Shown piece by piece: positions 3,672-35,867 of a DNA stretch of 64,000 bases (the first letter of the stretch is position 1; the number at the start of each line of letters is the position of its first letter). This DNA comes from Ostrea edulis. Taxonomy: Eukaryota. The notes below the pieces were generated by a model, which searched no databases, was not told the DNA's origin, and saw only the letters and a program-made list of their open reading frames with translations. The stretch is from positions 21,142,001 through 21,206,000 of the forward strand of contig NC_079164.1 of NCBI RefSeq assembly GCF_947568905.1. Direction: 5' to 3'. The position numbers and the translations under genes are program-made.

Positions 3672-4165
3672 CTGTATTTGGTTACATCGAGGAACTAAAC
3701 TTCTCCCTAAGAGTACTGTATATCAGTGTGGTTTAGTTTGCACACGGTCCAAATGTCGAACTCTTGGTTAATGAACATATTGTAGAGCATCGTAGAGGAT
3801 ACTCATTCTATTAATTGCGTGTCCCTCCGCAGAACTTTTTTGTTTTGGGAAAAGTAAAAAAGCAGTGGGTATCCATACCAATTACTTTAGCATTTTCATC
3901 TAAAACCACAACGGAATTGGTCGTGAAACTTGTGTGTCATTTCTTCCGTTTGAATATTAATCTACATTAATAGCGTGAATATTGAACAAATACTCCATGG
4001 GCTTCACTACAAGTGCGTACTGGCGGTATCGTAAGTAAATGAGATCCCACATGAGAGATGGAATATAACTGCAGGTGAGCTGCATTTCCATGACAACTCT
4101 GTCAAATTTGTTTCTCTCATATATGTAAGGACTGATTGCAGTGTGGTGACTTGCCATATCTAGGA

Positions 4166-9803: not shown

Positions 9804-12800
9804 GTCCAAACTTGCATTTTTGCAAAATAGAATAGTAATCTATCTATTAACGTGATGTAATAATAGACAGAGTTTTTATTTCGTATGGAGTGCTTTTCTT
9901 TGGCTTCAGCTTTCGGTTTAGTACAATGTGTTATGAAACATTTCTCCGGCAGTCTATCAGCTCAATCTTGACTGAAAATCAAATATTGCTGCCATGAAAA
10001 TGGACGAGCCTGTCAGCTGTGGACTCAACATTTCATAAACATGTAAATGCATTGTCCTGGTTACAATACCTTAAATCCTTCCCTTAAGCTATATATATAT
10101 ATATAATTTCCTCTTCTTATTTATACAAATGCAAATGCTTGATTGTGTTTAAGGATTGGTGTATTGTAACGCCACGTTTGACGATCTTCAGTGCTGGAAC
10201 TACACTCTTGCTGGTACCACTGCCTTCGGGGCCTGTCCCAAAGAACATAAATATTCTTACCTGTTCACAAATCCAAAAGGTATGACCATACTGATAAGTT
10301 ATCGTTGAATTGTTTATTACTTACATGAGTTTGACCCACATTCTCGGTGACACCCTCCCCTTTATTTGTGTATGCAAAACGATATCCTGTAAATGTGTGG
10401 TTCTTCAATTTCCAGTGACATTTAGCGCTTCAGTGATACAGACGTTCATTGATTTAGATATGTGGAAAACGAACGATAGTAAATAGATGCTCTAGACATG
10501 GAATTTACGCATTTACATTATTTTACATTATCTTATTTACGGTAATAGCAAACCTCCTGGGTCAGCGAAAACAGTTCGTTATAACCAAACTTCATTACAT
10601 GTGTACTCCAATAAAATGTTCGTTGTTTTCCTTTCATAGAGAAATAAACATCACTTTGCAATAGTGTAAATTCGTTTTAAAAGTGTTCGTTACAAGCGTG
10701 TAATACTGTATTTTAGTTTTGTAATCAGAATAAGAGGGGCGGATCATTAGGAGTGTGGATCCAAACGTTATCTGCGTGTTACACAAATGCATACATTGGA
10801 TACATAGACATTAGTACATTATAACATATAGGTCATTCATACTTGTATAGCAATATAGAATGTTGTGTACGAATTTGTATTTCTTAAGACTTCTAATCTA
10901 ACAAGCCAACACGGTGATGCATGGTGATGATGATTTGAGGTGATGATGATTTTAGGTGTTGATGATTTTAGTTTATGATGATTTAACATGTAGGTGTTGA
11001 TGATTTTAGGTGTTGATGATCTTAGGTGATGATGATCTTAGGTAATGATGATTTTAGGCGATGATGATTTTAGTTTATAATGATTTAACATGTAGGTGTT
11101 GATGATTTTAGGTGTTGATGATCTTAGGTGATGATGATCTTAGGTAATGATGATTTTAGGCGATGATGATTTTAGTTTATGATGATTTTAGGTGATGATG
11201 ATTTTAAATGATGATGATCTTAGGTGATGATGATTTTAGGTGTTGATGATTTTAGTTTATGATGATTTAACATGTAGGTGTTGATGATTTTAGGTGATGA
11301 TGATTTGAGGTGATGATGGTGTTAGGTGATGATGATTTTAGGTGATGATAATTTTAAGTGATGATGATCTTAGGTGATGATGATTTTAGGTGATGATGGT
11401 TTTAGGTGTTGATGATTTTATTTTATGATGATTTAACATGTAGGTGTTGATGATTTTAGGTGATGATGATCTTAGGTGATGATAATTTTAGGTGATGATG
11501 ATTTAACATGTAGGTGTTGATGATTTTAGGTGATGATGATCTTAGGTGATGATGGTTTTAGTTGATGATGATTTTAGGTGATGATGATTTAACATGTAGG
11601 TGTTGATGATTTTAAGTGATGATGATCTTAGGTGATGATGGTTTTAGTTGATGATTTTAGTTGATGGTGATTTTAGTTTATAATGATTTAACATGTAGGT
11701 GTTGATGATTTTAGTTTATTATGATTTAACATGAAGGTGTTGATGGTTTTAGGTGATGATGATCTTAGGTGATGATGATTTTAGGTGATGATGATTTTAG
11801 GTGATGGTGATTTGAGGTGATGATGATTTTAGGTGATGATGATTTTAGGTGATGATGATTTTAGGTGATAGTGATTTTAGGTGATAGTGATTTTAGGTGA
11901 TGATGATTTTAGGTGATGATGATATTAGGTGATGATGGTTTTAGGTTTCTCTAAACGGAAGTGTTCTGCGTCGGGTAGATGGGTACGGAAGAACTACACG
12001 AAAGAATTCCTGATCACAGATTACAGTCCTTGTGGTTCGCTACCCTTGGATGAAAACAACAAACAAGAGGTAATGTGTCGGGGTGCAATCCGCTCATGTG
12101 CTAAGTACCACGTACAGGGTAAACAAAGTCAATGGAACCTACGTTATATATATATCAGATTGAGGGGGGGGGGGGGTAATGCTAAATGTAATGGGAATGT
12201 TTAGAAATCAAAGCAACGCTAGTAATGTATAACCTTCCCCAGAAAGGTAGTGTATGTGATTGGTAATTTAATGCACTACTTCTAGAAATGTACTATAAGC
12301 TAACAATATGTGGCATTACATAACATACAAACAGACATGGAAATAATTTTAGCCTTCCTAATGATATTATCAGACTTGAAATATTTACATTTTATTTTTT
12401 GATAGGTATAAATTTTGAAAAATGAATAAAATGTATTAAACAATTACGCTTTTATCTATCAACCCTTTTAGGCTCCTTTATTTTCAAAAAATTCTTCATA
12501 ATAAAAACAATATGTTATGTCAGGTATCTGGAATCATTTAGGATTCAGCTGTTCTACCTTAGCAATTATAATATATACTACTCAAAATTTGATAAGGATC
12601 ACTAGGTTATATGTGTGTAATTTACCACTAACATAACAAAAGAGATAAATTTGACTCAGAAACGTGTTTACTCAGGTTATGAATGAAAATTCATGAACGG
12701 CATGGACTTTTATCAATACGGAATGCTTGAAATATGATAACAACACCAAAAGGCATTTCATTACAAAAAGTTAACAGCAGACCAGAGAAAGAATTACACA

Positions 12801-15800
12801 GTTTTTGGGGATAGTCCATCATTACACTTAGTCGATGAAGTGTCAATACCGGGTATGGCCTCCCCTTGCATCAATCACGGCTTGACAACGTCGAGCCATG
12901 CTGTCAATAAGCACCCGGATGTTTCCAATGGGAAGGTTGTTCCACTCTTCCACGAGGGCGTTTCCGAGCTCTGCGAAAGTCGTGGGTTGTGCTCTACGGC
13001 GTGAAAGGGCAACCTGCAGCATGTTCCATACATGCTAAATCGGGTTCAAGTCCGGCGAGCGCGCTGGCCAGTCCATACGGACAATTGTCTCCTGCTGAAG
13101 GTACTGCTCCACCACCCTAGCGCGATGAGGACGGGCGTTATCATCCATCAGGATGAACTCAGGGCCAACAGCACCAGCGTAGGGTCTGACGTAAATATCG
13201 AGGATCTCATCCCGGTACCGCACCCCCGTCATTGTTCCTCTCTCCGGGACATGAAGATCTGTTCTTCCATCCCTGCTGATTCCACCCCAGACCATGGTGG
13301 AACCACCACCATAACGGTCATGTTGATGTTGGCATCATGGAAACGTTCACGTTCACGTTGTCGTCGCCACACTCGGTGCCTCCTGTCTGTAAAGTCCAAA
13401 CAATACCTGGACTCCTCGGTGAACAGAACTTGAACCCAATCGTTCTGTGTCCAAGTGACATGATCTTCAGCCCAGTCCAATCGCTCCCGCCGGTGTCGAA
13501 CAGTCAGAGGGACTCGAACACATGTCCTTCTCGAGTTGAGACCTGCATTGTGAAGCCGATTCCGTATCGTCTGAGTGGACACATTCACCCCGTGGCGTTC
13601 AGGAGGTCGTTACGTAGGCTGGTTGCTGTCCAGAAGGGATGGCGTCGTGCCTGAAGAGCCACAAAATGGTCTTGGCGTTGGGTTGTCGACCTCTGACGAC
13701 CACCCCGATGTCGGTGTGCTGCTGTACCAAAAGTTTGCTGTCGGTTCCAGGCCCTGTTTACAACGCTCTGGCTGACGTTTAGTGCATTTGCAACGTCACG
13801 TTGTGAATATCCAGCGTCAAGCATTCCAATACATCTGCCCTGTTGTTCTGTCGTCAGGCGACGCCTTACACGTTGAGGGGGCATTGTGTTGATAAATGTA
13901 GTGTAAACACTCAAGTGAGTTTGAAATTTTAGAAAGAATCAGACACCAATGCCTGAGTGAAAATCGTGCAATGGTAACAAATGCATAAACTGTGATGAGA
14001 AACGCATTTCCCATGGCATGAAATGCACGTGCAAGTTTGTTGAAGACGTTTTTGATCTCACTTGGACACAATATTGCCAGTTATGCAGTTATTAATTTTT
14101 TAAACAGAAAAATATCTATGATCCTATCAAATTTTGAGTAGTATATACCAAGTGCAAATATCTCAAACAATATTCCACAACAGTAACATACAACACAACA
14201 CCAGTAACATACAACACAACATCAGTAACATACAACACAACACCAGTAACATACAACACAACATCAGTAACATACAACACAACACAACACCAGTAACATA
14301 CAACACAACACCAGTAACATACAACACAACATCAGTAACATACAACACCACACAACACCAGTAACATACAACACAACACCAGTAACATACAACACAACAT
14401 CAGTAACATACAACACAACACAACACCAGTAACATACAACACAACACCAGTAACATACAACACAACACCAGTAACACACAACACAACACCAGTAACATAC
14501 AACACAACATCAGTAACATACAACACAACACCAGTAACAGACAACACAACACCAGTAACATACAACACAACACAACACCAGTAACATACAACACAACACC
14601 AGTAACACACAACACAACACCAGTAACACACAACACAACACCAGTAACATACAACACAACACAACACCAGTAACATACAACACAACACCAATAACATACA
14701 ACACAACATCAGTAACACACAACACAACATCAGTAACACACAACACAACACCAGTAACACACAACACAACACCAGTAACATACAACACAACACAACACCA
14801 GTAACATACAACACAACACCAATAACATACAACACAACACCAGTAACACACAACACAACACCAGTAACACACAACACCAGTAACACACAACACAACATCA
14901 GTAACATACAACACAACAGTAGTAACACACAACACAACATCAGTAACACACAACACAACACCAGTAACACACAACACAACACCAGTAACATACAACACAA
15001 CACAACAGTAGTAACATACAACACAACACCAGTAACATACAACACAACAGTAGTAACACACAACACAACATCAGTAACACACAACACAACACCAGTAACA
15101 CACAACACAACACCAGTAACATACAACACAACACAACACCAGTAACATACAACACAACACCAATAACATACAACACAACACCAGTAACACACAACACAAC
15201 ATCAGTAACACACAACACCAGTAACATACAACACAACACAACACCAGTAACATACAACACAACACCAGTAACATACAACACAACACCAATAACATACAAC
15301 ACAACATCAGTAACATACAACACAACACCAGTAACATACAACACAACAGTAGTAACATACAACACTACACCAGTAACATACAACACAACATCAGTAACAC
15401 ACAACACAACACCAGTAACACACAACACAACACCAGTAACACACAACACAACACCAGTAACATACAACACAACATCAGTAACACACAACACAACACCAGT
15501 AACGTACAACACAACACCAGTAACATACAACACAACATCAGTAACATACAACACAACACAACACCAGTAACATACAACACAACATCAGTAACACACAACA
15601 CAACACCAGTAACATACAACACAACACCAGTAACATACAACACAACACCAGTAACATACAACACAACACCAGTAACATACAACACAACACCAGTAACATA
15701 CAACACCAGTAACATACAACACAACACCAGTAACACACAACACAACACCAGTAACATACAACACCAGTAACACACAACACAACACCAGTAACATACTACA

Positions 15801-18800
15801 CAACACCAGTAACATACAACACAACACCAGTAACATACAACACCAGTAACACACAACACAACACCAGTAACACACAACACAACACCAGTAACATACAACA
15901 CAACACCAGTAACATACTACACAACACCAGTAACATACAACACAACACCAGTAACATACAACACCAGTAACACACAACACAACACCAGTAACATACAACA
16001 CAACAGTAGTAACATACAACACAACACCAGTAACATACAACACAACACAACACCAGTAACATACAACACAACATCAGTAACACACAACACAACACCAGTA
16101 ACATACAACACCACACAACACCAGTAACATACAACACAACACCAGTAACATACAACACAACAGTAGTAACATACAACACTACACAACACCAGTAACATAC
16201 AACACAACACCAGTAACATACAACACAACACCAGTAACACACAACACCAGTAACATACAACACAACACCAGTAACATACAACACAACAGTAGTGTGGTTG
16301 AGTCCGTGTTTGGTTGCTCTGACGTACATCTTCTCAAACATTTAGAAATGAGTTATCCCTGAGAATGAAATACTTTATGTATTTTTGTTTGTATTTTAAT
16401 AGATCCTTAATTACCAAATACTGATAAACATTTACGTAAGCGGCTGTGTGACATCAGTATTTCTCCTGATAGTGGCTATAGTAGTGTTTAAACTATTTAG
16501 GTAAGAGAAACTGCTTATAAGTAATTTGATTTTACATATTTCCCGAAATGATTATGATTATGAATGTTGATGTAGCTATACAATATTACAGGCAACTTAG
16601 ATGTCCACGTGTAACTATTCATCTCAACCTGTTTATTTCCTACATTCTGAGTAATATTAGTTGGACCATCATGTTCATCAATTCTGGTGAGCCGGTAAGA
16701 TCCCAATGTCTTCTTTGTTTAATTTTGGTGTTCATTGTAAGATCGATCTAAGATAAATAGATTAAGCGATCCCTGTCTAAGTAAGGAGAGAAACTTTTTT
16801 GATATGAATATCATTTCTTACAACGTATCACCATTCAATCAGTAACTACGGTAATAAAATTACAGAAAAACCTTGTTTTATTTAAAGGATACAGAAAACG
16901 CTGATATCAAAATTAATTGAATGAATACATGTTAAGGTAAAAAAAAAAGGAATATAAAAACTTGATGCACATGACTATCTTTACAGCTGTGGTGTTACGT
17001 GCTGAACATTTTGGCCACGTTTACCTTGTTCAGTAATTATAGCTGGATGTGGGGGGAGGGCTGTTTCCTCTTTTTGTCTCTTGTGAACGTGTATTCCGAC
17101 AAAGAAAAGCTCCTCAAGATGTGCTGCTGTTTCGGTTGGAGTAAGTCCTACTGGGTTTTTTTTAATGTTATACGACTGTAAACGTTGAGTTCTTCAAATA
17201 TAGTGAAGTACTGTCACTTCACCAGGACCACCACATCCAAAAACAACCTATGGAGTCTATACATGTGTGGAAAATTATCCAGAGGTAAAACAACATGCAA
17301 AAAAAAATACTATCAACAGCAAAATACCAAAAACAACAACAACAACAACAACACCGCCACCATAACCACCAACATCATTACCACATACAAAACCACACTA
17401 TCACCACCACCAAACCACCATCAATAGCAACAACATTACCACATACAAAACCACACTATGACCACCACCAAAACACCATCAATAGCAACAACATTACCAC
17501 ATACAAAACCACACTATGACCACCACCAAACACCATCAATAGCAACAACATTACCACATACAAAACCACACTATCACCACCACCAAAACATCATCAATAG
17601 CAACAACATTACCACATACAAAACCACACTATCACCACCACCAAAACACCATCAATAGCAACAACATTACCACATACAAAATCACATTATGACCACCACC
17701 AAAACACCATCAATAGCAACAACATAACCACATACAAAACCACACTATCACCACCACCAAAACACCATCAATAGCAACAACATTACCACATACAAAATCA
17801 CATTATGACCACCACCAAAACACAATCAATAGCAACAACATTACCACATACAAACCACACTATGACCACCACCAAACACCATCAATAGCAACAACATTAC
17901 CACATACAAAACCACACTATCACCACCACCAAAACACCATCAATAGCAACAACATTGCCATCAATTGCCTCCAACATTCTTACTATAACGACCAACAATA
18001 ACACCCTCACTATCAACAGCAACAACACCAGCAACAATAAAAATATCGACAACATTATCAACATCATCACCTCATCTTTCACCAACACCATCTACAACAT
18101 TGCCACAATTACTACATCATTTTCATCAATATTACTATTAACAGGAAAACCACCATTACTACCAGCATCATTACCACTGACACCAAAAACAACACATTCA
18201 CCATTACTACCAACATCATCACCACCACCAACACTAAAAACAACACAGTCACCATTACTGCCAACATCATCACCACCAACACTAAAACAACACAGCCACC
18301 ATTACTGCCAACATCATCACCACCAACACTAAAACAACACAGCTACCATTACTACCAACATCATCACCACCAATAACACTAAAAACAACACAGCCACCAT
18401 TACTACCAACATCATCACCACCACCAACACTAAAACAACACAGACACCATTACTGCCAACATCATCACCACCAATAACACTAAAACAACACAGTCACCAT
18501 TACTGCCAACATCATCACCACCAATAACACTAAAACAACACAGTCACCATTACTGCCAACATCATCACCACCAATAACACTAAAACAAGACAGCCACCAT
18601 TACTACCAACATCATCACCACCAATAACACTAAAACAACACAGCCACCAATACTATCAACATCATCACCACCAACAACACTAAAACAACACAGCCATTAC
18701 TACCAACATCATCACCACCACCAACACTAAAAACAACACAGTCACCATTACTACAAACATCATCACCACCACCAACACTAAAAACAACACAGCCATTACT

Positions 18801-20295
18801 ACCAACATCATCACCACCAATAACACTAAAAACAACACAGACACCATTACTGCCAACATCATCACCACCAATAACACTAAAACAACACAGTCACCATTAC
18901 TGCCAACATCATCACCACCAATAACACTAAAACAAGACAGCCACCATTACTACCAACATCATCACCACCAATAACACTAAAACAACACAGCCACCAATAC
19001 TACCAACATCATCACCACCACCAACACTAAAACAACACAGCCATTACTACCAACATCATCACCACCACCAACACTAAAAACAACACAGCCATTACTACCA
19101 ACATCATCACCACCACCAACACTAAAAACGACACAGCCACCATTACTACCAACATCATCACCACCACCAACACTAAAACCAACACAGTCACCATTACTAC
19201 AAACATCATCACCACCACCAACACTAAAAACAACACAGCCATTACTACCAACATCATCACCACCAATAACACTAAAAACAACACAGTCACCATTACTGCC
19301 AACATCATCACCACCAATAACACTAAAAACAACACAGCCACCATTACTACCAACATCATCACCACCACCAACACTAAAACAACACAGTCACCATTAATAC
19401 CAACATCATCACCACCACCAACACTAAAAACAACACAACCATTACTACCAACATCATCACCACCACCAACACTAAAAACAACACAGTCACCATTACTACC
19501 AACATCATCACCACCAATAACACTAAAACAACACACCCACCATTACTACAAACATCATCACCACCACCAACACTAAAACAACACAGCCACCATTACTACC
19601 AACATCATCACCACCAATAACACTAAAACAACACAGCCACCATTACTACAAACATCATCACCACCACCAACACTAAAACAACACAGCCACCATTACTACA
19701 AACATCATCACCACCACCAACACTAAAACAACACAGCCACCATTACTACAAACATCATCACCACCACCAACACTAAAACAACACAGCCACCATTACTACA
19801 AACATCATCACCACCACCAACACTAAAACAACACAGTCACCATTAATACCAACATCATCACCACCACCAACACTAAAAACAACACAGCCACCATTACTAC
19901 CAACATCATCACCACCACCAACACTAAAACAACACAGCTACCATTACTACAAACATCATCACCACCACCAACACTAAAAACAACACAGACACCATTACTG
20001 CCAACATCATCACCACCACCAACACTAAAACCAACACAGTCACCATTACTGCCAACATCATCACCACCAATAACACTAAAAACAACACAGCCACCATTAC
20101 TACCAACATCATCACCACCACCAACACTAAAACAACACAGCCACCATTACTACAAACATTACCATCACCAATAACAACACCTCAACCGATTACCACAATA
20201 TCATCATCACCACTACCAATAACAACCGTCAACAGCAACAACACCGCCACTATAAGCACTAACAATGTTAACACCATCAGCAATAACAACATTAC

Positions 20296-20330
<35 letters not shown>

Positions 20331-21690
20331 CCACCACCAATAAAGAGAACAACACCACAATCTTACCACTACCACCACCACCAAAAATAACACCGCAACC
20401 ATTAACACCACCACCACCAAAAACAACACTGCAGTCATTATCTCCTCCATCAAGAAAAACACTGCAACCATTACCACCACCACCAAGAAAAACACTACAA
20501 CCATTACCACCACCACCACCAAGAACAACACCATAACCATGAACACAAACACCAAAAACAACAACGCAACCATTAACACCCCACCACCACCAAAAATATC
20601 ACTGCAACCATTAACACCACCACCACCACCAAGAACAATACCGCAACCATTAACACCACCACCACCACCAAGAACAACACCGCAACCATTAACACCACCA
20701 CCACCACCAAGAACAATACCGCAACCATTAACACCACCACCACCACCAAGAACAACACCGCAACCATTAACACCCCACCACCACCAAAAACATCATTGCA
20801 ACCATCACCATCAATAGCATCATTATCACCACCACCACCACCACGAACAACATCAGAACAACATCCTTATTAACAATTGTGCATGGAAACTATCGTTAAC
20901 AAATTGAAATAATGGCAAATTTTCACTGATTTTATTGCAGTTTTTCCTGTCGTTGTGATGGTCGTCTATATTGCCGCTAGAATCACGATAGGAGAAAAAC
21001 CAGGAGAGGTGTAAGTAGAATACATTACATTCCCCCCACTACTGAATGGTTATATGTTATCCCAGATAAGTATCATAAGATACACACAAATTCATTAGTT
21101 GTATTAAAACTTTAATGCAATACTAGCTGTCATTTTGGTGTCGAATTTTTTGTTGCAAAAATGTGATTTACTATTTCAATGACAGAAAAAATAAGGTTTA
21201 TAAACTTTTGTTATTAATATTTGTGTTAGAAAACCTATCCAGTGGCTCTGAATGAAGCACAATTGCATTACTGGCTTCCCGTACAGCAATTGATTTCTAA
21301 ATAATGCTATATATTCAATTGAACCGAGATCTTTATTTTGATAAAATCTTAAACTTATTTTTAATTTTATCAATGACTATGGTTAAAGTTACATACAAAA
21401 CTATCATAATAGCACATATTTACAACAAAATAAAAAATTTGATTTAGACCTGATATTACTTTAAAAATGCAAAAATATACATACTAACACTTACGGACCC
21501 CTGACAACGGGAAGATGCAGCGAAATATCAATACGCAATACTACAAACCCTTAAATTTCAGAAATGTATAAATGATCTTGACTCTGGGGAGACGTAGAAA
21601 ACTGTCACAAATGTTTGGCGAAGGTTTAATTCACAAACCGACTGTGATGCAATAATTGACTTTGTGAAAAAGAAAGAGTAATGTTAGAGA

Positions 21691-25774: not shown

Positions 25775-25961
25775 CAGGCGCGGATCCAGAAATTTTTTCC
25801 AGGGGGGGGGGGGGGGGCGGGTCGAACCTATACCCAAAATCGAACCCGTGATATAACTCATTTTTCTTATGAATCGTTATATTGTAATTTTTTTTATCTT
25901 TGCAAATTCCAGGGGGAGGGGGGGGGGGGGTCCGGACCCCCCCCCTCTAGATCCGCGCATG
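25775..25961. mobile_element. GGATCC-type MITE between the GPCR and PB1-B 3' ends
   Basis: CAGGCGCGGATCCAGA ... CTAGATCCGCGCATG termini with poly-G tracts. Confidence 0.65.
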
Positions 25962-26123: not shown

Positions 26124-28046
26124 TTATGGATCATCAGATATGGACAAGCTGGCGAGCGTTTTCAGGTCCTCGTCCCGCTGTTTCCGTCGCCTGCATTCTC
26201 GCTTCTGACGCGGGTAGCACTTGGCTCCTCGAATCCCATGACGTCGTAGTCGCTTCCTGTCACATCTTTTCAGGCGTCTCTTGATTTTGCATGGTATTTT
26301 GGAAACTGAAAAGAAATTCGGAAAACTGTCTGGAGATTTCTCAACCATCGCTTTCCTACTTTTCCGACATTTTCCTATGATCCGATGGGGATGACGCCGA
26401 TGAACAATGTCCTGTTGCAAGCTGTCTTCTATGAATTCACTTTCTTCATCTGTACTGCTTATCTTATCGGAGGTTTCTGCAATATTGAATTATTATATCA
26501 AAACCAGCTGTATGCTTACAGTCTTCAATTTTCTTTAGCGGACGTCAAGCCGTACACTTTTACATAACTTTGAACATTTGATAATCTTCTAATAAACACA
26601 GAATTGAGAGTAGGGCAAACACGGACCTCTGGTGTTTCCAGAGGTAGGATCAGGTACCTAGGAGGGGTAAGCATCCCCTGTCGACCGGCCACACCCGCCG
26701 TGAGCCCTATACATATTGATCAGGTAAACACAGCAACACTTTATGTCAAAATCAGTATGTAAAAGAAAAGCCTACGATATTGACATGAAACACGTCAGAA
26801 AGCATTCGACTTAACAGCAGGTTGTATTTGTAAATTAGATAATTATAACGTCCATAGACTGTCAAAATGCAGACTTTAAACGAGATTGTTGAAATCCCTG
26901 TAACATCAACTTATTTGTCAGTAAGCCTACCTCAGTTTAAAAATTGATTATACACAGAAGCTCTTGTTTTTCGTGATCTTCGTTGAAAAATTATGTAAAA
27001 AGTCCAGGATTAATATGATTATAGCCATTTATAAATACCTTGAATATAGATATTGAGGTCCTCCTCTGCTCTAAAGGAAACTGCTTCATTAAGCTCCTCC
27101 TGGGATGAAAACGTAATGAAATCTCCATCCATATCTGAAATTTTAAAAAACGTTTGTAAAAGTATATGTAATGTGTCATATCCTTCAACTTTATTAATTC
27201 AATATACGTTGTATATAGTCTTGTGGGGATCCAGGTTAGAATAGGTCCTCAGTACCCCTTGCTTGGCGCAAAAGGCGACTAAAATGGAGCGGTCCTTTGG
27301 ATGAGACCGCAAAAACCGAGGTCCCGTGTCACAGCAGGTGTGGCACGATAAAGATCCCTCCCTGCGCAAAGGCCGCAAGACATTGTATTTACATTTCAAT
27401 AAGTTGACCATGTTTACATGGAAATCAAAATTCATCATTTATATTACGCCCATTACATTAAGTATACAGTATGTCTCTATCGCCGTGTACTACAGCATCA
27501 GTCTGATTAAAATTATATCCTATGATCCGCTCATCTATTATCGCTACGTATGAGTGCGTTCGAGATCGCCGTTCCCGTTGTTCTCGTGCTCCGTTCTTAG
27601 AGTCGCGAAGGACGAGAACATGTGCGGTGAAGTATGAAGCGCGAGCTTCGAAGACTTACGTACTAAGGCTACAGAGGTGGTGTGAGTTCTTGCATCTCGA
27701 ACCCGTTCTCGGGTTGCGTACTTGGCGTTCGGGATCGACAGGAATTTGTACTCGTGCGAAGAACGGCGATCTCGAACGCACTCTTGGTGTAGCGATAGTA
27801 GATGAGCGGATCATGGGATCTAATTTTAATCAGATTGACTAAGTACGGAATATGCTTGAATATACAGGTATACGTGTTCAAAGTCAATCAACTGCAGTAC
27901 ATACCTTTCCATTGAAGGAAGTAATTCTGCGCATGAGGGAAATTTTCCTGAATTACTGTAACCAAATATACGTAGTCAAGATTCCCATCTATAACATCAA
28001 ATTCGCTGAGAATTATCCCAGTTTCTGATATGACGTTTACTTTCAT
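26124..28046 (-). CDS. PB1-domain protein B (p62/SQSTM1-like PB1 plus short Arg/Lys/Cys-rich tail), 196 aa, 3 exons
   Basis: Exons 28046-27905 (MKVNVISETG..YFLQWK, G|GTATGT), 27134-27039 (TTTCAG|DMDGDFITFSSQEELNEA..LNIYIQ, OPCA motif) and 26476-26124 (TTGCAG|ETSDKISSTDEES..HRRHPHR..CRRRKQR..SISDDP*). An in-frame alternative acceptor exists at 26449. 591 nt in frame. Confidence 0.85.
26607..26735. repeat. Probable interspersed-repeat fragment (class unresolved) in PB1-B intron 2
   Basis: GC-rich island AGGGCAAACACGGACCTCTGG..GGATCAGGTACCTAGGAGGGGTAAGCATCCCCTGTCGACCGG in AT-rich context; resembles common bivalve repeats from memory only. Confidence 0.4.
27223..27378 (+). mobile_element. 3'-truncated copy of the SINE-like family at 4873-5133
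   Basis: Near-identity to the reverse complement of ~4985-5133. Confidence 0.75.
27498..27838. mobile_element. 341 bp MITE with ~80 bp imperfect TIRs in PB1-B intron 1
   Basis: TCAGTCTGATTAAAATTATATCCTATGATCCGCTCATCTATTATCGCTAC..GAGTGCGTTCGAGATCGCCGTTC is mirrored at 27762-27838. Confidence 0.8.
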
Positions 28047-28149
28047 GTTTGTGAATAGGTAGTGTATTTGCTTCGAAATTTACAACTGTTCACGAATGTT
28101 AAACACTCAATATTTCTCATGAGTCATAAAAACATATTCATTTGTAATG

Positions 28150-28580
28150 TCCGACTGGCGTCAGTGAGCGCGCTTTTGCGCCAACTGGCGCTTTTATAGG
28201 GCGCTAATAAAAGTCATGTGATAAAGTCTTAAAATAGATATCGAGAATGTTCTGCTTTGATTTCCGCAAACCCACGCGTTATGAATATTCATATTAGCTT
28301 TTCGAATAGCGACTACTGAAGTATCAAACTGATTAGAAAAGAAGGTAGAATGATAGATACATTATAAGTTATGCCTTATATAATATTTCCATACAGAAAA
28401 TGTAATGATATTATTGAGAACTAGCAATAAATATATAGGGATCATGAATATTAATGAGAAGTGAACTTACCTTGACACCTCACGTGATTTTGGAATTACG
28501 AAATACCAGTCACATGACTCATCTAGCAGGCGCCTATATAAAGGCGCCCTAAGCGCGATTGAGCACAAAAGCGCCCAAGT
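28150..28580. promoter_or_regulatory. Bidirectional promoter with two mirrored core modules (TCACATGAC E/M-box + GC-flanked TATA)
   Basis: Plus: GTCACATGAC 28509-28518, overlapping TGACTCA 28515-28521, then GGCGCC-TATATAAAG-GCGCC (TATA 28535). Minus: TCACATGAC 28221-28213, then GCGCCC-TATAAAAG-CGCC (TATA 28198-28191). Confidence 0.7.
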
Positions 28581-28707
28581 GAAGATTGATAGCAGCTTAA
28601 CGTATAAGTCTATCAAATTACCACAGGTACTGTAAAATACTTATTGTTTTATAAAGTATTTGAAATTGCGATTTGTTTGTAAACAATTCCACGTGCATCA
28701 ACAAAAC

Positions 28708-31700
28708 ATGGTGAAAGTGAAAGTAACCTTGATGTCGGCCAGTGAGCCAGAAATCAGACGAATAACGCTGGGAAACGACTCCGACTTTAGCGAATTTGAG
28801 ACGAGAGTGTCAGCATTGTTTGCAGAAAGCAGCGGAACATTTAAGTTCCACTGGAAAGGTAAGATATTTTGAAAAATAGTCTTATCGAGTCCACCAGCGC
28901 CAGCACTAGCTATGTAGTATTTGTGTCACAGAAAAGGACTGTAAATTTGGTCCCCTTACATGGCAATCGTTTTTTAAAGTAGCCAGTTAAAAATATTGTG
29001 CAATTTTTTGTGAATTAAGGCTTGTTCCTACATTAATGATTTTGTGTGTGTGTTCTACTTGAGACAAAAGTTAGTACTTTCAATTTTTTTCAATTGAGGG
29101 AATAAAGTGACATTTCACAACACAGTTAATTACATGTAGCTCCACCGAAAATATATAGGTCGCTATGAATGAAGTTCCCCGGATCCTATTTTAATAGCTT
29201 TAAACTGAGGAGGAAAGAGTAATGTGTTTCCATGACCTAATGTTTCATAACTGAAGAAAATACTTTCATATATTGTACATATCTTCTGATGTGTCTATAT
29301 TACGACAAGACTCAATCGGAACATCACTCGGTCTATTCCGGATTCTCCGGAATAGACCGAGTGATGTTGCGACAAGACTGTGATCTTCCCAAGTCAAGGA
29401 TTTCTGATCCGCTCCGATCAGAAACCATGGACTTGGGAAGATATAGTTTGATGGAGTGTGTATAACAGGGAAAAATTATTTTCTTTATATAAGTAGTACT
29501 ATTTTAGGCAGATGTTTCTTTCAAAGACTGGTCAGTAATGGAATGGTTCTCTAATGCATTCGATGTTATTGAAACATAAAATCACAAACGGAGATGTTTT
29601 TATAGTGATAAAATAACGACGAAAAATGGGCTGCTCCATTTCTGACGTCAAACCATTAGAAACGTTGTGAAACTGGTAGTAAATATGTTCATGGTTTTAT
29701 CGCTCAAAAATTTAAATTTCAAAAGGAGATGACGTTTGAATAAAATGTAAATTTAGAAAGATTTCACATGAATTTGAAAATGTTTAGGGAATTAGGGTTC
29801 AAATTGGGCCCTTATCACTCAAAGCTCTTTGACGATAGATACAAACGCGTACGTGTATCACAAGTTCACGACAATTGTAGAGATATTTATAGTGTCAGAT
29901 TATTTTGATTATGAGCCATTTCAAAGCTTCAGCTGTTACGATGTTCTCCTCAGCCGTTGGCCGATGTATTTAAACATTTCTTTAAAGTATTATATACATA
30001 TCATTGCAGATGATGAAAATGACCTAGTCGTGATATCGACTGACGAGGAATTCCATGAGGCGACCAAGACCGTTAGCGATGAGACTCTGAGAATCTTCAT
30101 TCAGAGATTAAAAGGTTTGAAAACTAATTATGACAGTATTTATCATAAGATTTATATTAAGACCTCTTTGAAGAAGATTTAGCGTTAACATGATAGGAAG
30201 TCTGAATAGTATTTTTGTTCTATATACATTGTAATACATGCAGTTTATTTTTAATTCATAGATTGCTCTAACATCTTAGCGGGGAGAAAAGTGGAATTTG
30301 ATAACAATCCTGACGTTCTAAAGGTATTTAACTAGACAGCTGTAGATTTAATTTAATTTGCCCATGCGCATTTGTAGGTGATTCAAATTTTAACATGTAT
30401 CTCTAAGTGAAAATGTGTAATCCAAATAAAATTTTAATTATGCTATATATAAATTATACCAACTGCTGCAGTGACCCACAAAACACTCAAAATTAAAATA
30501 TAAGTGTTGATCACACATGTTACGGTAAACTGTTAATACACGTATTAAATTGATTTTTTTTTGGTTGTAGACCGAGTTGACTGCTGAGGAATTTCGACCT
30601 AGAAGATGGGAACGTCGCTGCGGTCTAGGGAGATTTGGCCGAGGTCAGAGATCGTTGAGTCCAGCACCATTCATGAGGCGCAGAAGATACCAAAGAGAGA
30701 TGCGTGAGCAACAACCATCTGAAAGAAGGATGTGGAAGCGCATGCATCGAGAAAATGTTGATGGGTTTGATAAACCTTGGAAAAACATCCATGGACATCG
30801 GTCTGGATGTGGCTATGGTAGACAACAGAAAAGGGCTTTAAGATGCAATGATAGAGATCAATATCGGATCTCGAATGGTGTATGCCCCGAAAATGCAGGA
30901 CACCGCTGGGGTAGAGATGAGAAGGGGAGTCGGAGGAGTCAACGTCGATTTGCTCGATATTTAAGGCAGACATTGGACTGCGAGCTCATGACCAATGAAA
31001 ACTGCCGTTCTCGCATGAGAAATCGAGGGATGAAATCCTGCAGGCGAGCAGAGTCGGCCCCACCCACTCGTTTTTACGGAAGAAACCGTGCAGGTTGCGG
31101 GAAGATGATGCACGGAGAAGGAAGAAGATGCAGACGTTCTGCATCAGTCCCTCCACAAGAAAGGGGAAGGAAACCAGAAACACTTGGGATGCCGGTTGGT
31201 AAGAGAAGTTGCAGGCGACACAGACACCGAATGGGGAAAATCTTGCTGAAGATGACTATAAAGGGAATGCAACAGCATGACTGCGAATCAAATGCAGGTT
31301 TAGAGAGAAAATGTTTCGGAAGACGATGCAAAAGTTACAGACGAAGGGCAATGATGATTAAGGAACAGAATGATGACACTTCAAGTTCCCATCAAAAGTA
31401 CGACAGAGAACCTGAAATATCCGAACTCGTCGAAACCATGACCATCGACGATAGCAAAAGCGAAGACCAAAAGGAAAGGGATGTATGTGAAAAAAGAGAA
31501 AGAAAGAGAGCATGCAAACATAGAAAAAGTGATGAAGAAGATGATGTAACAGATGAGAATACCAATTCCGAGAAGGAAAAGAAAAAGTGCCTTAGAAGGC
31601 ACAGAAGAAAGGACGAGTCTGACGGAGCAACCGGATTACAAGAAGACTCCACTGAAGGTCAGGAAGACACTGAGGGAAATGGAGGTCTCCTGGAAGGAAA

Positions 31701-32118
31701 ACGTCGAGGAAGACGCAGGGCGAAAGAATGCCAGCGTTCTATGCGTGATGAAACTACTGCTCGCTGCAAAAAGAATGGAGACGAAGAACACGACTTTGGG
31801 ATTCTCACTTTGACGGTTGGAATGAATGGCGACATGAAAATAAAACCCCGGAAACTGGCACGGAAACTTGGCAAATTTTTCAATCAGTATAGCACCGGCT
31901 GCCAGGAAGACGAGCCGTTCGGAACACGACATGGTCATAAAGAGTTCAAACAATACCGTGGTCGCGATTCTGAGCGCCAGTACAGACGAATGCTCCGCCG
32001 TCAAGGACGTCCCGGAGAAAAAGTGCGGGATTGGCATCCAGAATGTCCAAGCAACCACTGGAGTGGAATCAGAGCCCCTGGACTGAGGAATATGCGTCCA
32101 CGTGATTGTCCATGGTAG
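28708..32118 (+). CDS. PB1-domain protein A (p62/SQSTM1-like PB1 plus ~520 aa Arg/Cys/Gly-rich low-complexity tail), 621 aa, 4 exons
   Basis: Exons 28708-28858 (MVKVKVTL..PEIRRITL..FKFHWK), 30010-30114 (DDENDLVVISTDEEFHEA..LRIFIQRLK, OPCA), 30262-30323 (DCSNILAG..DVLK) and 30571-32118 (contains the 513 aa ORF). All phases fit; 1866 nt; AATAAA near 32548. Confidence 0.88.
29300..29470. repeat. Double-hairpin element in PB1-A intron 1
   Basis: Perfect 23 bp stem with 3 nt loop at 29320-29368; second stem-loop at 29383-29442; ends GTGTATAACAG. Confidence 0.8.
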
Positions 32119-32589
32119 GGGACGTCAGATTAAAGATATACAGTGAATCGGACAAGTAAATTTATTTACTTTTAATGTACCCTTTACTATCATATTCTCG
32201 CTTATTTGTGCTTTATTGGTTTTTGAGGTTATATGCGATTTTCTTTAAATCATATTGATGAATTTTAATGAACGTATTATAAAACCTTTCATTTTCTATG
32301 AAGAGAGAAACAATACCTTACTGAAAATGTCATTGAAATGCCTTTGGAAGATATTTCAAACAATGTAATATCACTTGGAAGTATGATTTGGATCATCACA
32401 AATTTTGTTAGGAAGTTAATGTTTCATTTTGTAAATCTAGATTGATTTCGATTATGTAACATGTTCAAAATTCTCTTGATGTTGAATTAAGTATTGTATG
32501 ATTGCTGTATTAGTATATATATGTATATTTATTCTATTGATGTACGGCAATAAACATTTGTGTAGTAATCCTCGTCTGTTTTATTCAGT

Positions 32590-35210
32590 GGAAGATATAA
32601 TCTATACGATATTACAGGATATATCGGGAGATAAAACCTATACCATGTTACAGGATAAATCGGAGATAAAACCTACACCATGTTACAGATAAATCGAAAT
32701 AAAACCTATACCATGTTACAGGATAAATCGGTGATAAAACCTAAACAATACTACAGGATAAATCTGTGATAAAACCTATACGATATTACAGGATAAATCG
32801 GAGATAAAACCTATACCATGTTGCAGGATAAATCGGAGATGAAACCTACACCCTTTTACAGGATAAATCGGATAAAACCTACACCATATTACAAGATCAA
32901 ATTGCAATAAAACCTATACCATGTTACGGGATAAATCAGAGATAAAACTTATACCTTGTTACAGGAAAAATCAGAGATAAAACCCATACCTTGATACAGG
33001 ATACATCGGAGATAAAACCTATATCATATTACAGAATACATCGAGATAAAACCTATACCATATTACAAGGATAAATCGCAGAAAAAACTATACCATGTTA
33101 CAGGATATATCGGAGATAAAACCTATACCTTGTTACAGGATATATCGAGATAAAAACTATACCATGTTACAGGATATATCGAGATAAAACCTATACCTTG
33201 TTACAGGATACATCGAGATAAAACCTACACCATTTTACAGGATCAAACTGAAATAAAACCTATACCATGTTACAGGATAAATCAGAGATAAAACTTATAC
33301 CATGTTACAGGATAAATCGGAGATGAAACCTATACCATGTTACGGGATATATTGGAGATAAAACCTGCATCATATTACAGGATAAATCAGAGATAAAACC
33401 TATACCTTGTTACAGGATACATCGAGATAAAACCTGTACCATATTACAGGATACATCGAGATAAAACCTATACCATATTACAGGATATATCGAGATAAAA
33501 CCTATACAATATTACAGGATACATCGAGATAAAACCTACACTATATTACAGGATACATCGAGATAAAACCTACACCATTTCACGGGATCAATCTGAAATA
33601 AAATCTTTACCATGTTGGGGAAAAAATCAGAGATAAAACCTATACCTTGATACAGGATATATCGGAGATAAAACCTATATCATATTACAGAATACATCGA
33701 GATAAAACCTATACCATATTACAGGATAAATCGCAGAAAAAAACTATATCATATTACAGGATATATCGAGATAAAACCTACACCATTTTACAGGATCAAA
33801 CTGAAATAAAACCTATACCATGTTACAGGATAAATCGGAGATAAAACCTATACCTTGTTACAGGATATATAGAGATAAAACCTATACCATATTACAGGAT
33901 ATATCGAAATAAAACCTATACCATGTTACAGGATAAATTAAGAGAAAACTTATACCATATTACAGGATATATCGAGATAAAACCTATACCATATTACAGG
34001 ATAAATCGCAGAAAAAACTATACCATATTACAGGATATATCGAGATAAAACCTATACCTTGTTACAGGATATATCGAGATAAAACCTATACCATGTTACA
34101 GGATATATCGAGATAAAACTTGTACAATATTACAGGATAAATCGGAGATAAAACCTAAACCATATTACAGGATATATTGACAATAAAACCTATACTTTAT
34201 TACAGGATACATCGAGATAAAACTTACACCATTTTACAGGATCAATCTGAAATAAAACCTATACCATGTTACGGGATATATCGAGATAAAACCTATACCT
34301 TGTTACAGGATATGTCAAGATAAAACCTATACCATATTACAAGATAAATCGGAGATAAAACCTATACCATGTTACGGGATAAATCAGTGATAAAACCTAT
34401 ACCATATTACAGGATATATCGAGATAAAACCTATACCTTGTTACAGGATATATCGAGATAAAACCTATACCTTGTTACAGGATATATCAAGATAAAACCT
34501 ATACCATATTACAGGATAAATCAGTGATAAAACCTATACCATATTACAAGATAAATCGGAGATAAAACCTATACCTTGTTACAGGATATATCGAGATAAA
34601 ACCTATACAATATTACAGGATATATTGTAGATAAAACCTATACCATGTTCAGTGATTTTTCTACATTTTTTAGAAGGGTACTGTGGCTTTGGAACTGGGA
34701 AAAATTGTCGACATTTCAGTTAAATTGGGAAAAATCAATTTTATCGTAATTAAGTTTTAAATTCATATCAAACATTATATTATCTTTATTTTACACATCT
34801 AATTTTCTTCAACCTTTTAAAATTTTCAACTATTCTATCCATATCATTCCCATAACTCTTTGTTAAGTCTTATGTATATAAATCACATCGAATGTTTATT
34901 TTTTTCTAAAATACGTTTTCCTTTCATAATTTTATTATTGGGAAAAATGCAAGCTAAATTGGGGGAAAATTGGCAATTTTTAGGAGGGGAAAGGTCCGAA
35001 ATTTGGACCCAAAATGGACCTTAAAAAATCACTGATGTTACAGGATATATCGAGATAAAACCTATACCTTGTTACTGGATCTATTGAGATAAAACCTATA
35101 CCATATTACAGGATATATCGAGATAAAACATATACCATGTTACAGGATATATTGGAGATAAAACATTTACCCTATTACAGGATAAATCTGAGATAAAACC
35201 TATACCATGT
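32590..35210. repeat. Minisatellite, 34-35 bp unit TTACAGGATATATCGAGATAAAACCTATACCATG, interrupted by a MITE
   Basis: Direct reading (period 34 at 34441/34475). Confidence 0.95.
34650..35034. mobile_element. 385 bp non-autonomous DNA transposon, CAG termini, 5 bp TSD (ATGTT)
   Basis: TIRs CAGTGATTTTT / AAAAAATCACTG; ATGTT on both sides; the satellite resumes in register after it. Confidence 0.8.
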
Positions 35211-35867
35211 TAAACTACTATTGATAATTCAGGTATGAAGACTAGACCCGGAAAACTTCAAAATCGATCTGTAATTTGTTAAGGCAAAGCAATCATCATG
35301 TTGTACTGAACATCAAATGAATATCTGTAAGCACAACTAAAAAAAAAAGTTAGGAAAACTGATAATTCATGCTATTTTTCTAAGTCCAAGGGTCATAACT
35401 TAGTGAAAAATCAACAGACCAATTATGATATTGCAATGATATATCAGAGATTAAGTGACTGTAAGCACTAAGTATGATGTTCCTCATCAGGACGGTATGT
35501 ATCTATTAAATGACAGTGCATCAGGTAACTCCATACTCACATTTTTATCTGATAAAATGTAAAAAGTGTATTAATTTTCATTTATTAGAGTTAGAACTAA
35601 TAAATCATCAAATAAAAATACTGGTCATCGCACTTTTAAAGATGCAAGACACACAAGAACAAAATCCTATATCAACGTCAGAAAATTACAATTCTCCTTA
35701 AACAGCGTTATCTAAATTTCATAAAAACTGGTTATTATGGTACAATAGTGTTTCATAACAATTTCTTGAAACTGTTTCTTTACAAAAATATATGTTTGTG
35801 AAAAATAAAGGAAATCCATTGCATAATGGACTTGAAAAAGAAATCCATATAAACCAACTCTGACTTC

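What the first reader, a model, noticed from the sequence alone, without database searches (positions are those of the whole stretch)
26124..32118. Head-to-head pair of p62-like PB1 genes whose ZZ/UBA half is replaced by Arg/Cys-rich polycationic tails
Seen: two divergent genes with start codons only ~660 bp apart (28046 minus, 28708 plus). Both have a phase-1 intron after an F-x-x-W-K motif, a second exon carrying the acidic OPCA motif (DDENDLVVISTDEE / DMDGDFITFSSQEE), and a last exon that is basic, Arg/Cys-rich and low complexity (~520 aa vs ~115 aa). Gene B is absent from the ORF track except for its tail. Known: SQSTM1/p62 has the same PB1 layout (EIRRF, then HYR|DEDGD). From memory its exon 2 is 96 nt, the same as gene B's exon 2 (verify). 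p62 continues with ZZ, LIR, KIR and UBA, and no ZZ or UBA is visible here. Inference: a lineage-specific inverted duplication produced a co-regulated two-component scaffold in which PB1 filaments display polycationic arms. Such arms could bind nucleic acids or polyanions, or form condensates, in immunity, germline or stress responses.
Basis: partly seen in the sequence, partly recalled or inferred. Interest (0 to 1): 0.85.

Follow-up and report, generated by a model that had tools for sequence, protein, structure and literature searches.

The report
Oyster p62-like PB1 gene pair
Two back-to-back oyster genes each carry the self-assembly (PB1) domain of the autophagy receptor p62 fused to a new disordered, positively charged tail; the pair and its shared promoter are conserved across oysters, so it looks like an unstudied "polymer plus cap" scaffold, though its function is untested.

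Summary
The window is Ostrea edulis chromosome OX387704.1 (about 21.1 Mb). Both genes are RefSeq models named "uncharacterized protein". Gene B (-) is LOC125663650, 196 aa, three exons. Their start codons are 661 bp apart.

Both PB1 domains match p62/SQSTM1 best among solved structures. Their nearest non-family relatives are mostly PB1-ZZ(-UBA) proteins. Gene B's exon 2 is 96 nt with phase-1 introns on both sides, exactly as in scallop p62. Neither protein has a ZZ or UBA domain.

The A-type tail was found only in Ostreidae. The head-to-head pair and a footprinted promoter recur in Saccostrea and Crassostrea. The promoter has mirrored GC-clamped TATA boxes, each preceded by TCACATGACT.

Both genes are under purifying selection (dN/dS about 0.25-0.30). 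A keeps the canonical Lys, the double-arginine finger and the OPCA motif, so it is predicted to polymerise. B keeps only OPCA, so it is predicted to cap.

The tails are predicted disordered and strongly basic (A tail net +53), but A's tail has invariant motif islands. The polymer-plus-cap mechanism and any nucleic-acid binding are inferred, not shown. I class this as a new variant of a known kind, of moderate interest. Another first-reader note on this same stretch (s1-274792) proposed the same polymer-plus-cap idea.

The parts
28708..28858 (+). Gene A exon 1 (151 nt): PB1 N-terminal half with canonical Lys (KVKVTL) and double-arginine finger (EIRR). Ends in phase 1 after FHWK.
   Evidence: Pfam PB1 on this piece E 0.011; identical layout in P0001
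30010..30114 (+). Gene A exon 2 (105 nt): OPCA motif DDENDLVVISTDEE and the rest of PB1. Phase-1 donor.
   Evidence: Pfam PB1 E 3.7e-5 on this piece; AG/GT sites
30262..30323 (+). It restores the reading frame into exon 4.
   Evidence: Without it the frame breaks. The paralog P0001 carries the encoded peptide. A 56-62 nt exon is conserved in Saccostrea.
30571..32118 (+). Gene A exon 4: 515-aa disordered basic tail, net charge +53. Invariant islands: CRSRxRNRE (31003-31026), RRAxSAPP (31042-31065), RSxSxP (31132-31155), RRCKSYRRRAMM (31321-31356), EPEISELVETMTI (31408-31446), LTLxV..P.KLARKL (31804-31869) and C-terminal RPRDCPW (32095-32115).
27905..28046 (-). Gene B exon 1 (142 nt): PB1 N-terminal half. 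Asn sits at the canonical Lys position and LSE replaces IRR, so there is no arginine finger. Ends in phase 1 after LQWK.
27039..27134 (-). Gene B exon 2 (96 nt): OPCA motif DMDGDFITFSSQEE. Phase-1 introns on both sides, as in scallop p62.
26124..26476 (-). Gene B exon 3: acidic linker, then a basic tail with a conserved block around PDxxPxFFS..PC.IKRRLKR.DRK.
   Evidence: AF2 pLDDT 45-70
28047..28707 (.). Shared divergent promoter and 5'UTRs (661 bp), footprinted across Ostrea, Saccostrea and Crassostrea.
   Evidence: alignments A2 and A7
28187..28221 (-). B-side core promoter: GC-clamped TATA box (28187-28205; reads TATAAAA on the minus strand) and M-box-type E-box TCATGTGA (28214-28221).
28444..28549 (+). 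A-side proximal promoter: ATGAATATTAAT (28444-28455), TCACGTGA (28480-28487), TCACATGA (28510-28517) and the GC-clamped TATA element GGCGCCTATATAAAGGCGCCC (28529-28549).
   Evidence: The Crassostrea transcript contig starts about 45 nt after the orthologous TATA.
28281..28292 (.). Palindrome ATGAATATTCAT, the second copy of the conserved ATGAATATT element.
28586..28616 (+). Conserved palindrome in gene A's 5'UTR: TTGATAG-N17-CTATCAA. It could be two inverted GATA-type sites or an RNA hairpin; unexplained.
   Evidence: invariant block; lies inside the Crassostrea transcript

Best explanation
Shown. This locus holds a conserved, divergently transcribed pair of oyster-specific genes descended from the PB1-encoding first two exons of a p62/SQSTM1-type gene. 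An inverted duplication that included the core promoter most likely created the pair before the Ostrea, Saccostrea and Crassostrea lineages split. Each copy acquired a new, intrinsically disordered, net-basic C-terminal tail in place of ZZ-LIR-UBA. Both genes are under purifying selection.

Inferred mechanism. Gene A keeps all three determinants that p62 needs for head-to-tail polymerisation: the beta1 lysine, the double-arginine finger EIRR and the acidic OPCA motif. It therefore probably self-assembles into PB1 filaments or oligomers that display many polycationic tails. Those tails carry conserved short motifs, including an invariant RSxSxP that fits the 14-3-3 mode-I consensus.

Gene B keeps only the acidic OPCA face. 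It could dock on the free basic end of an A polymer, or of canonical oyster p62, but could not be extended. It would act as an end-cap or length regulator, as NBR1's PB1 does for p62 filaments.

The two core promoters are mirror copies: TCACATGACT, then a GC-clamped TATA box, then a GCGC..AAAAGCGC element. The A side has an extra TCACGTGA. These palindromic T-flanked E-boxes are the type preferred by MiT/TFE factors, which suggests joint control of the two genes. What the tails bind is unknown. Nucleic acid or another polyanion is the most likely guess from composition alone.
For: Identity and gene models.

PB1 domain: Pfam scores are above gathering for the A family (39.7-48.9 bits) and B (28.3-36.5 bits) against a cut-off of 23.6. 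AF2 gives pLDDT 70-82 for the PB1 of the A paralog P0001 and above 90 for B's PB1. Foldseek top hits for B are all PB1 domains.

p62 affinity: the best PDB sequence matches are SQSTM1, at 1.7e-8 for the PB1 of the A paralog P0001 (NBR1 0.46) and 1.4e-4 for B. Of the 50 nearest non-family hits, 34 carry ZZ, 18 carry the p62 UBA_5 and 6 are NBR1-type. Scallop p62 has the same intron phases and a 96-nt exon 2.

Lineage restriction: an exhaustive HMMER profile search found tail matches in only about 11 clusters. All that could be placed are oyster sequences.

Conserved pair: head-to-head A/B occurs in S. echinata (L003), S. cucullata (L004) and a Crassostrea contig (L007), with the Asteroid gene as neighbour in Ostrea and S. 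cucullata.

Selection: dN/dS is 0.25 for B and 0.29 for A between Ostrea and Saccostrea.

Expression: a Crassostrea RNA-run contig carries the fully spliced 602-aa ORF, and its cluster has 239 Logan members.

Surface asymmetry: K and IRR are 36/36 conserved in the p62-like set and kept in A. B has N and LSE, IRD or FHV there, while OPCA is kept in both.

Polymer rules and NBR1 end-binding and shortening: PMC6978347.

Promoter: three TCAYGTGA sites lie in 661 bp, against about 0.07 matches expected there. They are positionally conserved in four loci and largely in Crassostrea. The A-side and B-side modules align with each other.

A+B as one clade is not rejected: the constrained tree is 40.7 lnL units better, p-AU 0.925.
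Against: - No biochemical or expression data exist for these proteins. Polymerisation, capping and tail ligands are inferred from sequence only.
- No transcript evidence for gene B was found here beyond the RefSeq models. No Logan transcript carries the exact B protein.
- The free PB1 tree did not place A and B as sisters. B has a very long stem, so the better constrained tree may partly reflect long-branch effects.
- The A and B tails are not detectably homologous (hhalign E 0.24).
- The Crassostrea B-side E-box is TCATGCGA, so it is not strictly conserved.
- The scallop p62 promoter lacks the module, so MiT/TFE control is not evidently inherited from p62.
- The recent O. edulis paralog of A at 70.49 Mb lacks a functional B partner and the C-terminal RPRDCPW motif. 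Its dN/dS against the window copy is 0.58, so A can persist, at least briefly, without an adjacent B.
- The 14-3-3, NES and MiT/TFE assignments are consensus matches only.
Confidence: 0.6

Rival explanations
1. A and B do not form their own polymer system. They are accessory subunits of canonical oyster p62 bodies. A co-polymerises with SQSTM1 and B caps SQSTM1 filaments. Together they tune body size or add polycationic cargo-binding arms to the ordinary autophagy receptor.
For: Both PB1 domains are closest to p62. Oysters keep a canonical SQSTM1 with PB1, ZZ and UBA (PMC7595595). NBR1 does this for p62 in vertebrates (PMC6978347). B's PB1 is more like scallop p62 (34% identity) than like A (22-26%).
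Against: The A/B linkage and the mirrored promoter, conserved across three genera, argue that the two work with each other. Neither has a recognisable LIR or UBA. No interaction data exist. This rival overlaps with the main model rather than excluding it.
Confidence: 0.25
2. The proteins are nuclear or nucleolar basic proteins (chromatin, sperm-nuclear or RNA-packaging). The Arg/Cys-rich tail is the working part and PB1 only provides dimerisation. There is no link to autophagy-type filaments.
For: The tail is 18% Arg and 4% Cys with net charge +53, and has clusters that look like nuclear localisation signals. The compositional neighbours in the ESM Atlas include viral core and nucleocapsid proteins and SR-rich proteins, but only at non-significant scores of 0.39-0.54.
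Against: The Atlas scores are far below any useful threshold. The tail also has a conserved acidic middle block and motif islands unlike protamines. The full AB-type polymerisation signature is conserved in A under purifying selection (PB1 dN/dS 0.22). That would not be needed for simple dimerisation.
Confidence: 0.1
3. Gene B is a decaying partial duplicate of A or p62 with no function, annotated only because its ORF happens to be open.
For: It is short. Pfam finds nothing on exon 1 alone. No transcript contig with the exact protein was found. The paralogous locus keeps only a 22-codon relic of B. One S. cucullata copy has a truncated tail.
Against: The three-exon ORF is intact, with canonical splice sites and the same exon sizes (139-142 and 96 nt) in Ostrea and Saccostrea. 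Exon 1 is open in Crassostrea as well. dN/dS is 0.25, with the tail at 0.27. The full protein scores above the Pfam gathering cut-off. B has its own conserved TATA and E-box promoter. Asn at the lysine position is invariant in every B sequence examined.
Confidence: 0.05

Closest known systems
p62/SQSTM1 (sequestosome-1), including bivalve sequestosome-1-like (Pecten maximus XP_033742230.1)
   Same: The N-terminal PB1 is the nearest in sequence. A keeps the beta1 Lys, the EIRR double-arginine finger and OPCA. Intron positions and phases are identical, and B's exon 2 is 96 nt like the scallop gene's.
   Different: ZZ, LIR, KIR and UBA are absent. The C-terminal part is replaced by an unrelated disordered basic tail. 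Oysters retain a separate canonical SQSTM1, so these are extra paralogs and not the orthologue. The promoter module was not found upstream of scallop p62.
NBR1 PB1 domain (type A, OPCA only)
   Same: Like B, it has an acidic face but no functional basic face. It binds one end of p62 filaments and shortens them. This is the functional analogy for B.
   Different: B lacks the ZZ, FW (N_BRCA1_IG), LIR and UBA of NBR1. In sequence B is nearer to p62 than to NBR1. B's capping activity is untested.
TFG and plant NBR1 (other polymerising AB-type PB1 proteins with a double-arginine finger)
   Same: An AB-type PB1 with tandem arginines followed by long disordered regions; these proteins form polymers or condensates.
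   Different: Sequence similarity is much lower than to p62. TFG's tail is Q/P-rich, not polycationic. TFG did not appear among the PDB sequence matches.

Membership tests
PB1 domain (Pfam PF00564) | Sequence match above Pfam's gathering score | tested here: met
   A family 39.7-48.9 bits and B family 28.3-36.5 bits, against a cut-off of 23.6. The two halves of the window's own gene A each hit PB1 separately.
PB1 domain (Pfam PF00564) | Ubiquitin-like beta-grasp PB1 fold | tested here: met
   AF2: B residues 1-80 have pLDDT above 90 and the A paralog's PB1 70-82. Foldseek top 30 hits for B are PB1 structures, with TM by target 0.6-0.78.
Polymerising type-AB PB1 (p62-like) | Canonical beta1 lysine, double-arginine finger and OPCA acidic motif in one domain | tested here: met
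   Gene A and all A orthologues have VKVTL, E(I/M)RR and WKD-D/E-x-D...EE. The rule comes from PMC6978347. Gene B lacks the first two.
Polymerising type-AB PB1 (p62-like) | Actual filament or oligomer formation | not testable with these tools
   Needs recombinant protein (pelleting, EM).
Type-A (OPCA-only) PB1, for gene B | OPCA present; basic lysine and arginines absent | tested here: met
   DxDGDxITxSSQEE is invariant in B. Asn replaces the Lys that is 36/36 conserved in the p62-like set. LSE, IRD or FHV replace the IRR that is 35-36/36 conserved. Crassostrea B exon 1 likewise has Asn at position 4.
p62/SQSTM1 orthologue | ZZ zinc finger after PB1 | tested here: not met
   Pfam finds only PB1 in the full-length A-family and B proteins. 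No ZZ was found in the window-encoded tails.
p62/SQSTM1 orthologue | C-terminal UBA (UBA_5) | tested here: not met
   No UBA hit. The gene models end at conserved stop codons.
p62/SQSTM1 orthologue | LIR (acidic-W/F/Y-x-x-L/I/V) and KIR motifs | tested here: inconclusive
   Reading the conserved islands of alignment A1 by eye showed no p62-like DDDWTHL or DPSTGE motif. Short motifs in disordered sequence cannot be excluded.
NBR1 | FW / N_BRCA1_IG domain and NBR1 UBA | tested here: not met
   No such Pfam hits in A or B. NBR1's PB1 is a much weaker match than p62's.

The most novel reading that the evidence does not exclude
The pair is a dedicated, genetically linked polymer-plus-cap module. 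Gene A builds p62-type PB1 filaments that present hundreds of polycationic, 14-3-3-regulated arms to capture nucleic acids or other polyanions, for example viral or damaged-organelle material. Gene B sets filament length. Both are switched on together by an MiT/TFE-type factor through mirrored M-box/TATA promoters. This would be a previously unknown, UBA- and LIR-independent branch of p62-type scaffolding invented in oysters.
Probability: 0.15. Interest if true: 0.7.

Novelty: new variant of a known kind. Interest (0 to 1): 0.45.

Why it matters
p62-type PB1 filaments are the scaffold of selective-autophagy bodies. How filament length is set, and what else such filaments can display, are open questions. 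Here evolution has detached the p62 PB1 from its ubiquitin and LC3 modules. It has fused the PB1 to a new polycationic disordered tail and kept beside it a basic-face-dead PB1 copy under a mirrored promoter. This arrangement has held across three oyster genera.

That gives a natural, compact system for testing the polymer-plus-cap idea and the effect of multivalent cationic arms on condensates. It also marks an uncharacterised, conserved oyster gene family that may bear on stress or infection biology in farmed species. If the proteins prove not to assemble, the result is still a clean case of lineage-specific exon shuffling around PB1.

Tried and rejected
1. A three-exon model for gene A is rejected. 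Joining exon 2 (donor at 30114) directly to 30571 or 30577 breaks the frame, giving 36 stops. An alternative donor at 30134 gives an open frame but is contradicted by the paralog's protein, which contains the 62-nt exon's peptide.
2. The B tail as a condensed version of the A tail. I thought CKSYRRRAMM versus KCRKSRKAM, and RRMLRRQGR versus RKRLRRHGIR, looked alike. hhalign of the tail profiles gives E 0.24, so this is not supported.
3. The weak Rel-homology (RHD_DNA_bind) hit on the B tail (E 0.011-0.029, 15-16 bits against a cut-off of 27) is absent from the Saccostrea B proteins. I treat it as chance.
4. ESM Atlas searches on the whole proteins and on the tails gave no score above 0.81 (whole) or 0.56 (tails), so they give no usable lead.
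5. Inheritance of the promoter module from p62: no TCAYGTGA, CACGTG or GC-clamped TATA lies in the 2 kb upstream of scallop p62.
6. Literature: no paper mentions LOC125663650, LOC125683287, LOC117692966 or LOC111132525, and none describes an oyster PB1 family of this kind.
7. Looking up the C. gigas RefSeq orthologue's genomic context failed, because the protein is not on record in the contig index. A short Crassostrea contig (L007) was used instead.
8. The free PB1 tree (127 sequences, 87 columns) is too poorly resolved to place A and B. Only the AU test was informative.

Full report
**Where we are.** The window has no N. A 21.9-kb stretch of Ostrea edulis chromosome OX387704.1 (21,158,124-21,180,046, reversed) matches window 16124-38046 at 100%. 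So the window is O. edulis. Called genes around the finding are an Asteroid-like gene, a 621-aa PB1 gene, a 196-aa PB1 gene and a secretin-type (7tm_2) GPCR.

**Gene models.**
- Gene B (minus strand) has exons 28046-27905 (142 nt), 27134-27039 (96 nt) and 26476-26124 (353 nt). Splice sites are AG/GT. The translation is exactly RefSeq LOC125663650 (P0011, 196 aa).
- Gene A (plus strand) starts at 28708. Exon 1 ends in phase 1 at 28858. Exon 2 is 30010-30114 (105 nt).
- Joining exon 2 directly to the long ORF breaks the frame. A 62-nt exon at 30262-30323 restores it and gives 621 aa, the length of the called gene.
- The 89%-identical paralog LOC125683287 (P0001) contains the peptide of that small exon. 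Saccostrea orthologues have the same four-exon layout: 148-151, 105, 56-62 and about 1560 nt.

**PB1 identity.**
- Full-length A-family and B-family proteins score above Pfam's PB1 gathering cut-off, and nothing else is found.
- AF2 models give a confident PB1 for the A paralog P0001 (pLDDT 70-82) and for B (above 90). The tails fall below 50 for A and at 45-70 for B.
- Foldseek matches B's model to solved PB1 domains: aPKC, NBR1, MEK5 and p62.
- By sequence, the best solved relatives of both are SQSTM1. The PB1 of the A paralog P0001 scores 1.7e-8 against 0.46 for NBR1. B scores 1.4e-4 against 0.047 for PKC iota.

**Wider relatives.** I searched 1.84 billion cluster representatives with an exhaustive HMMER profile of eight A-family proteins. 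Tail matches appeared in only about 11 clusters. Those that could be placed are Ostrea, Saccostrea or Crassostrea sequences. The next hits match only the PB1. Of 50 of them, 34 carry ZZ, 18 carry the p62-type UBA_5 and 6 are NBR1-type. One is Pecten maximus "sequestosome-1-like".

**Exon structure against p62.** In the scallop gene, exon 1 ends in phase 1 right after YWK. Exon 2 is exactly 96 nt and also ends in phase 1. That is gene B's structure. Gene A's exon 2 is 9 nt longer. Oysters also keep a canonical SQSTM1 with PB1, ZZ and UBA (PMC7595595). A and B are therefore extra, truncated-and-refitted paralogs and not the orthologue.

**The pair is old and conserved.**
- In S. echinata, a 194-aa B orthologue (P0194) lies head-to-head with an A-type gene about 690 bp away.
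- In S. cucullata, a B-type gene lies 645 bp from A (P0003), with the Asteroid gene alongside, as in Ostrea.
- A 1.4-kb Crassostrea-type contig (L007) has an open B exon 1 on the opposite strand, 649 bp from A's ATG.
- A Crassostrea RNA-run contig (L008) carries the uninterrupted 602-aa ORF with intron 1 removed. It starts about 45 nt after the TATA box. Its protein cluster has 239 Logan members. So the A orthologue is transcribed and spliced.
- Nei-Gojobori dN/dS between Ostrea and S. echinata is 0.25 for B (PB1 0.21, tail 0.27) and 0.29 for A (PB1 0.22, tail 0.30). dS is near 1.1-1.5, so these are rough values.
- Both tails are thus constrained. A's tail has invariant islands across eight sequences.

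**A recent duplicate.** A 5.2-kb segmental copy (window 27985-33172, about 90.7% identity) lies at 70.49 Mb on the same chromosome. It carries A, the promoter and only the first 22 codons of B. That A copy has lost the conserved C-terminal RPRDCPW. Its dN/dS against the window copy is 0.58.

**Asymmetric PB1 faces.** According to PMC6978347, p62 and AtNBR1 filaments need three things: the beta1 lysine, a double-arginine finger in beta2 and the OPCA acidic residues. That paper also shows that NBR1's PB1 binds one end of p62 filaments and shortens them.
- All A proteins keep VKVTL, E(I/M)RR and the OPCA motif.
- All B proteins keep OPCA (DxDGDxITxSSQEE).
- In B, an invariant Asn sits where 36 of 36 p62-like sequences have Lys. 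LSE, IRD or FHV sit where 35-36 of 36 have IRR.
- Crassostrea B exon 1 likewise has Asn at position 4.

This is the basis for predicting that A is a polymer former and B a non-extendable cap. It is an inference from sequence. An earlier first-reader note on this stretch (s1-274792) states the same idea. I had reached it independently, and I tested only its sequence premise.

**Origin by inverted duplication.**
- Inverted repeats link the two exon-1 starts, the two exon-1 ends with their donors, and two promoter segments.
- When the A-side promoter is aligned to the reverse complement of the B side, in both Ostrea and Saccostrea, a common core appears. It is TCACATGACT, a short spacer, a GC-clamped TATA box, then AGCGC..GC.CAAAAGCGC.
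- The PB1 tree resolves A (99) and B (100) as clades nested among PB1-ZZ proteins, but little else.
- Forcing A+B together gives a better likelihood (+40.7) and is not rejected (p-AU 0.925). B's long stem is a caveat.

**Promoter.**
- TCAYGTGA occurs at 28214, 28480 and 28510. The window as a whole has 9 matches against 6.85 expected, so the three sites (four matches) in 661 bp compare with about 0.07 expected there.
- The same three sites recur at matching positions in the O. edulis paralog and both Saccostrea loci.
- In Crassostrea the two A-side sites are kept, and the B-side one reads TCATGCGA.
- Three-genus alignments show these sites inside sharply conserved blocks separated by unalignable DNA. 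Conserved with them are both TATA boxes, two ATGAATATT elements, a CACGTG just before A's ATG and a palindrome in A's 5'UTR.
- From general knowledge, T-flanked CACGTG/CATGTG boxes (CLEAR and M-box types) are preferred by MiT/TFE factors. That assignment is a consensus-level lead.
- The scallop p62 upstream region lacks the module.

**The tails.**
- A's 515-residue tail is 18% Arg, 7.6% Lys, 9% Glu and 4% Cys, with net charge +53. It has a basic first half, an acidic middle and a basic end.
- Its invariant motifs include RSxSxP, which fits the 14-3-3 mode-I consensus. About 30 residues upstream lies RRAxSAP.
- Other invariant motifs are RRCKSYRRRAMM, EPEISELVETM and LTLxV..P.KLARKL (weakly predicted as a strand plus helix). 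A C-terminal RPRDCPW is also conserved in most sequences but is lost in P0001 and P0009.
- B's tail has an acidic linker and then a basic block with a conserved PDxxPxFFS..PC.IKRRLKR core.
- The two tails are not detectably related.
- No family, Atlas or structure search explains them.
- Ligand identity is therefore a guess from charge.

**Verdict.** This is a real, conserved, oyster-restricted pair of p62-PB1-derived genes. It is annotated but uncharacterised, and no literature on it was found. It is not a member of the p62 or NBR1 families by architecture. It most likely works like a p62-type PB1 polymer with an NBR1-like cap, carrying novel cationic disordered arms. I rate it a new variant of a known kind, with interest 0.45.

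Noticed in passing
window 32593-34649 (also 35035-35212); L001 13755-14328: A 35-bp satellite of about 60 copies starts some 475 bp after gene A's stop codon. The same satellite lies at the right edge of the 5.2-kb segmental duplicate at 70.49 Mb. The duplication breakpoint therefore falls inside the array, which hints at satellite-mediated recombination.
   Followed up: partly
L001 (O. edulis OX387704.1, 70,487,557-70,510,810): This is the paralogous copy of gene A with the promoter, about 90.7% identical. Only the first 22 codons of gene B remain. The A copy ends in ...KNAST instead of the conserved RPRDCPW. dN/dS against the window copy is 0.58.
   Followed up: partly
window 28586-28616: The palindrome TTGATAG-N17-CTATCAA in gene A's 5'UTR is almost invariant across Ostrea, Saccostrea and Crassostrea. 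It lies inside the Crassostrea transcript. It could be two inverted GATA-type sites or an RNA hairpin.
   Followed up: no
window 28281-28292 and 28444-28455: Two conserved copies of ATGAATATT(C/A)AT, one on each side of the divergent promoter. They resemble POU/Oct-type palindromic sites; this is recalled from memory and untested.
   Followed up: no
window 27522-27842 (intron 1 of gene B): A roughly 320-bp element with long terminal inverted repeats that looks like a MITE. Related fragments occur in L001 upstream of the duplicated promoter.
   Followed up: no
window 25800-25950: Two long G-runs and C-runs flank a short AT-rich segment just downstream of gene B's stop codon. They may be transposon termini or a site where assembly is difficult.
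   Followed up: no
window 14177-20805: Several CA-rich minisatellites (periods 21, 58, 50 and 39 nt; up to 99 copies) with extreme GC and AT skew lie inside the span of the neighbouring 7tm_2 GPCR gene.
   Followed up: no
L003 (S. echinata) 2273-4135 and 10001-12651; L004 (S. cucullata) 1-1930 and 10001-12604: Saccostrea carries tandem extra A-type copies. In S. echinata, B's head-to-head partner is a truncated 365-aa A-type gene, and the full-length gene lies about 6 kb downstream. S. cucullata has two full-length A genes and at least two B-type genes, one with a truncated tail.
   Followed up: partly
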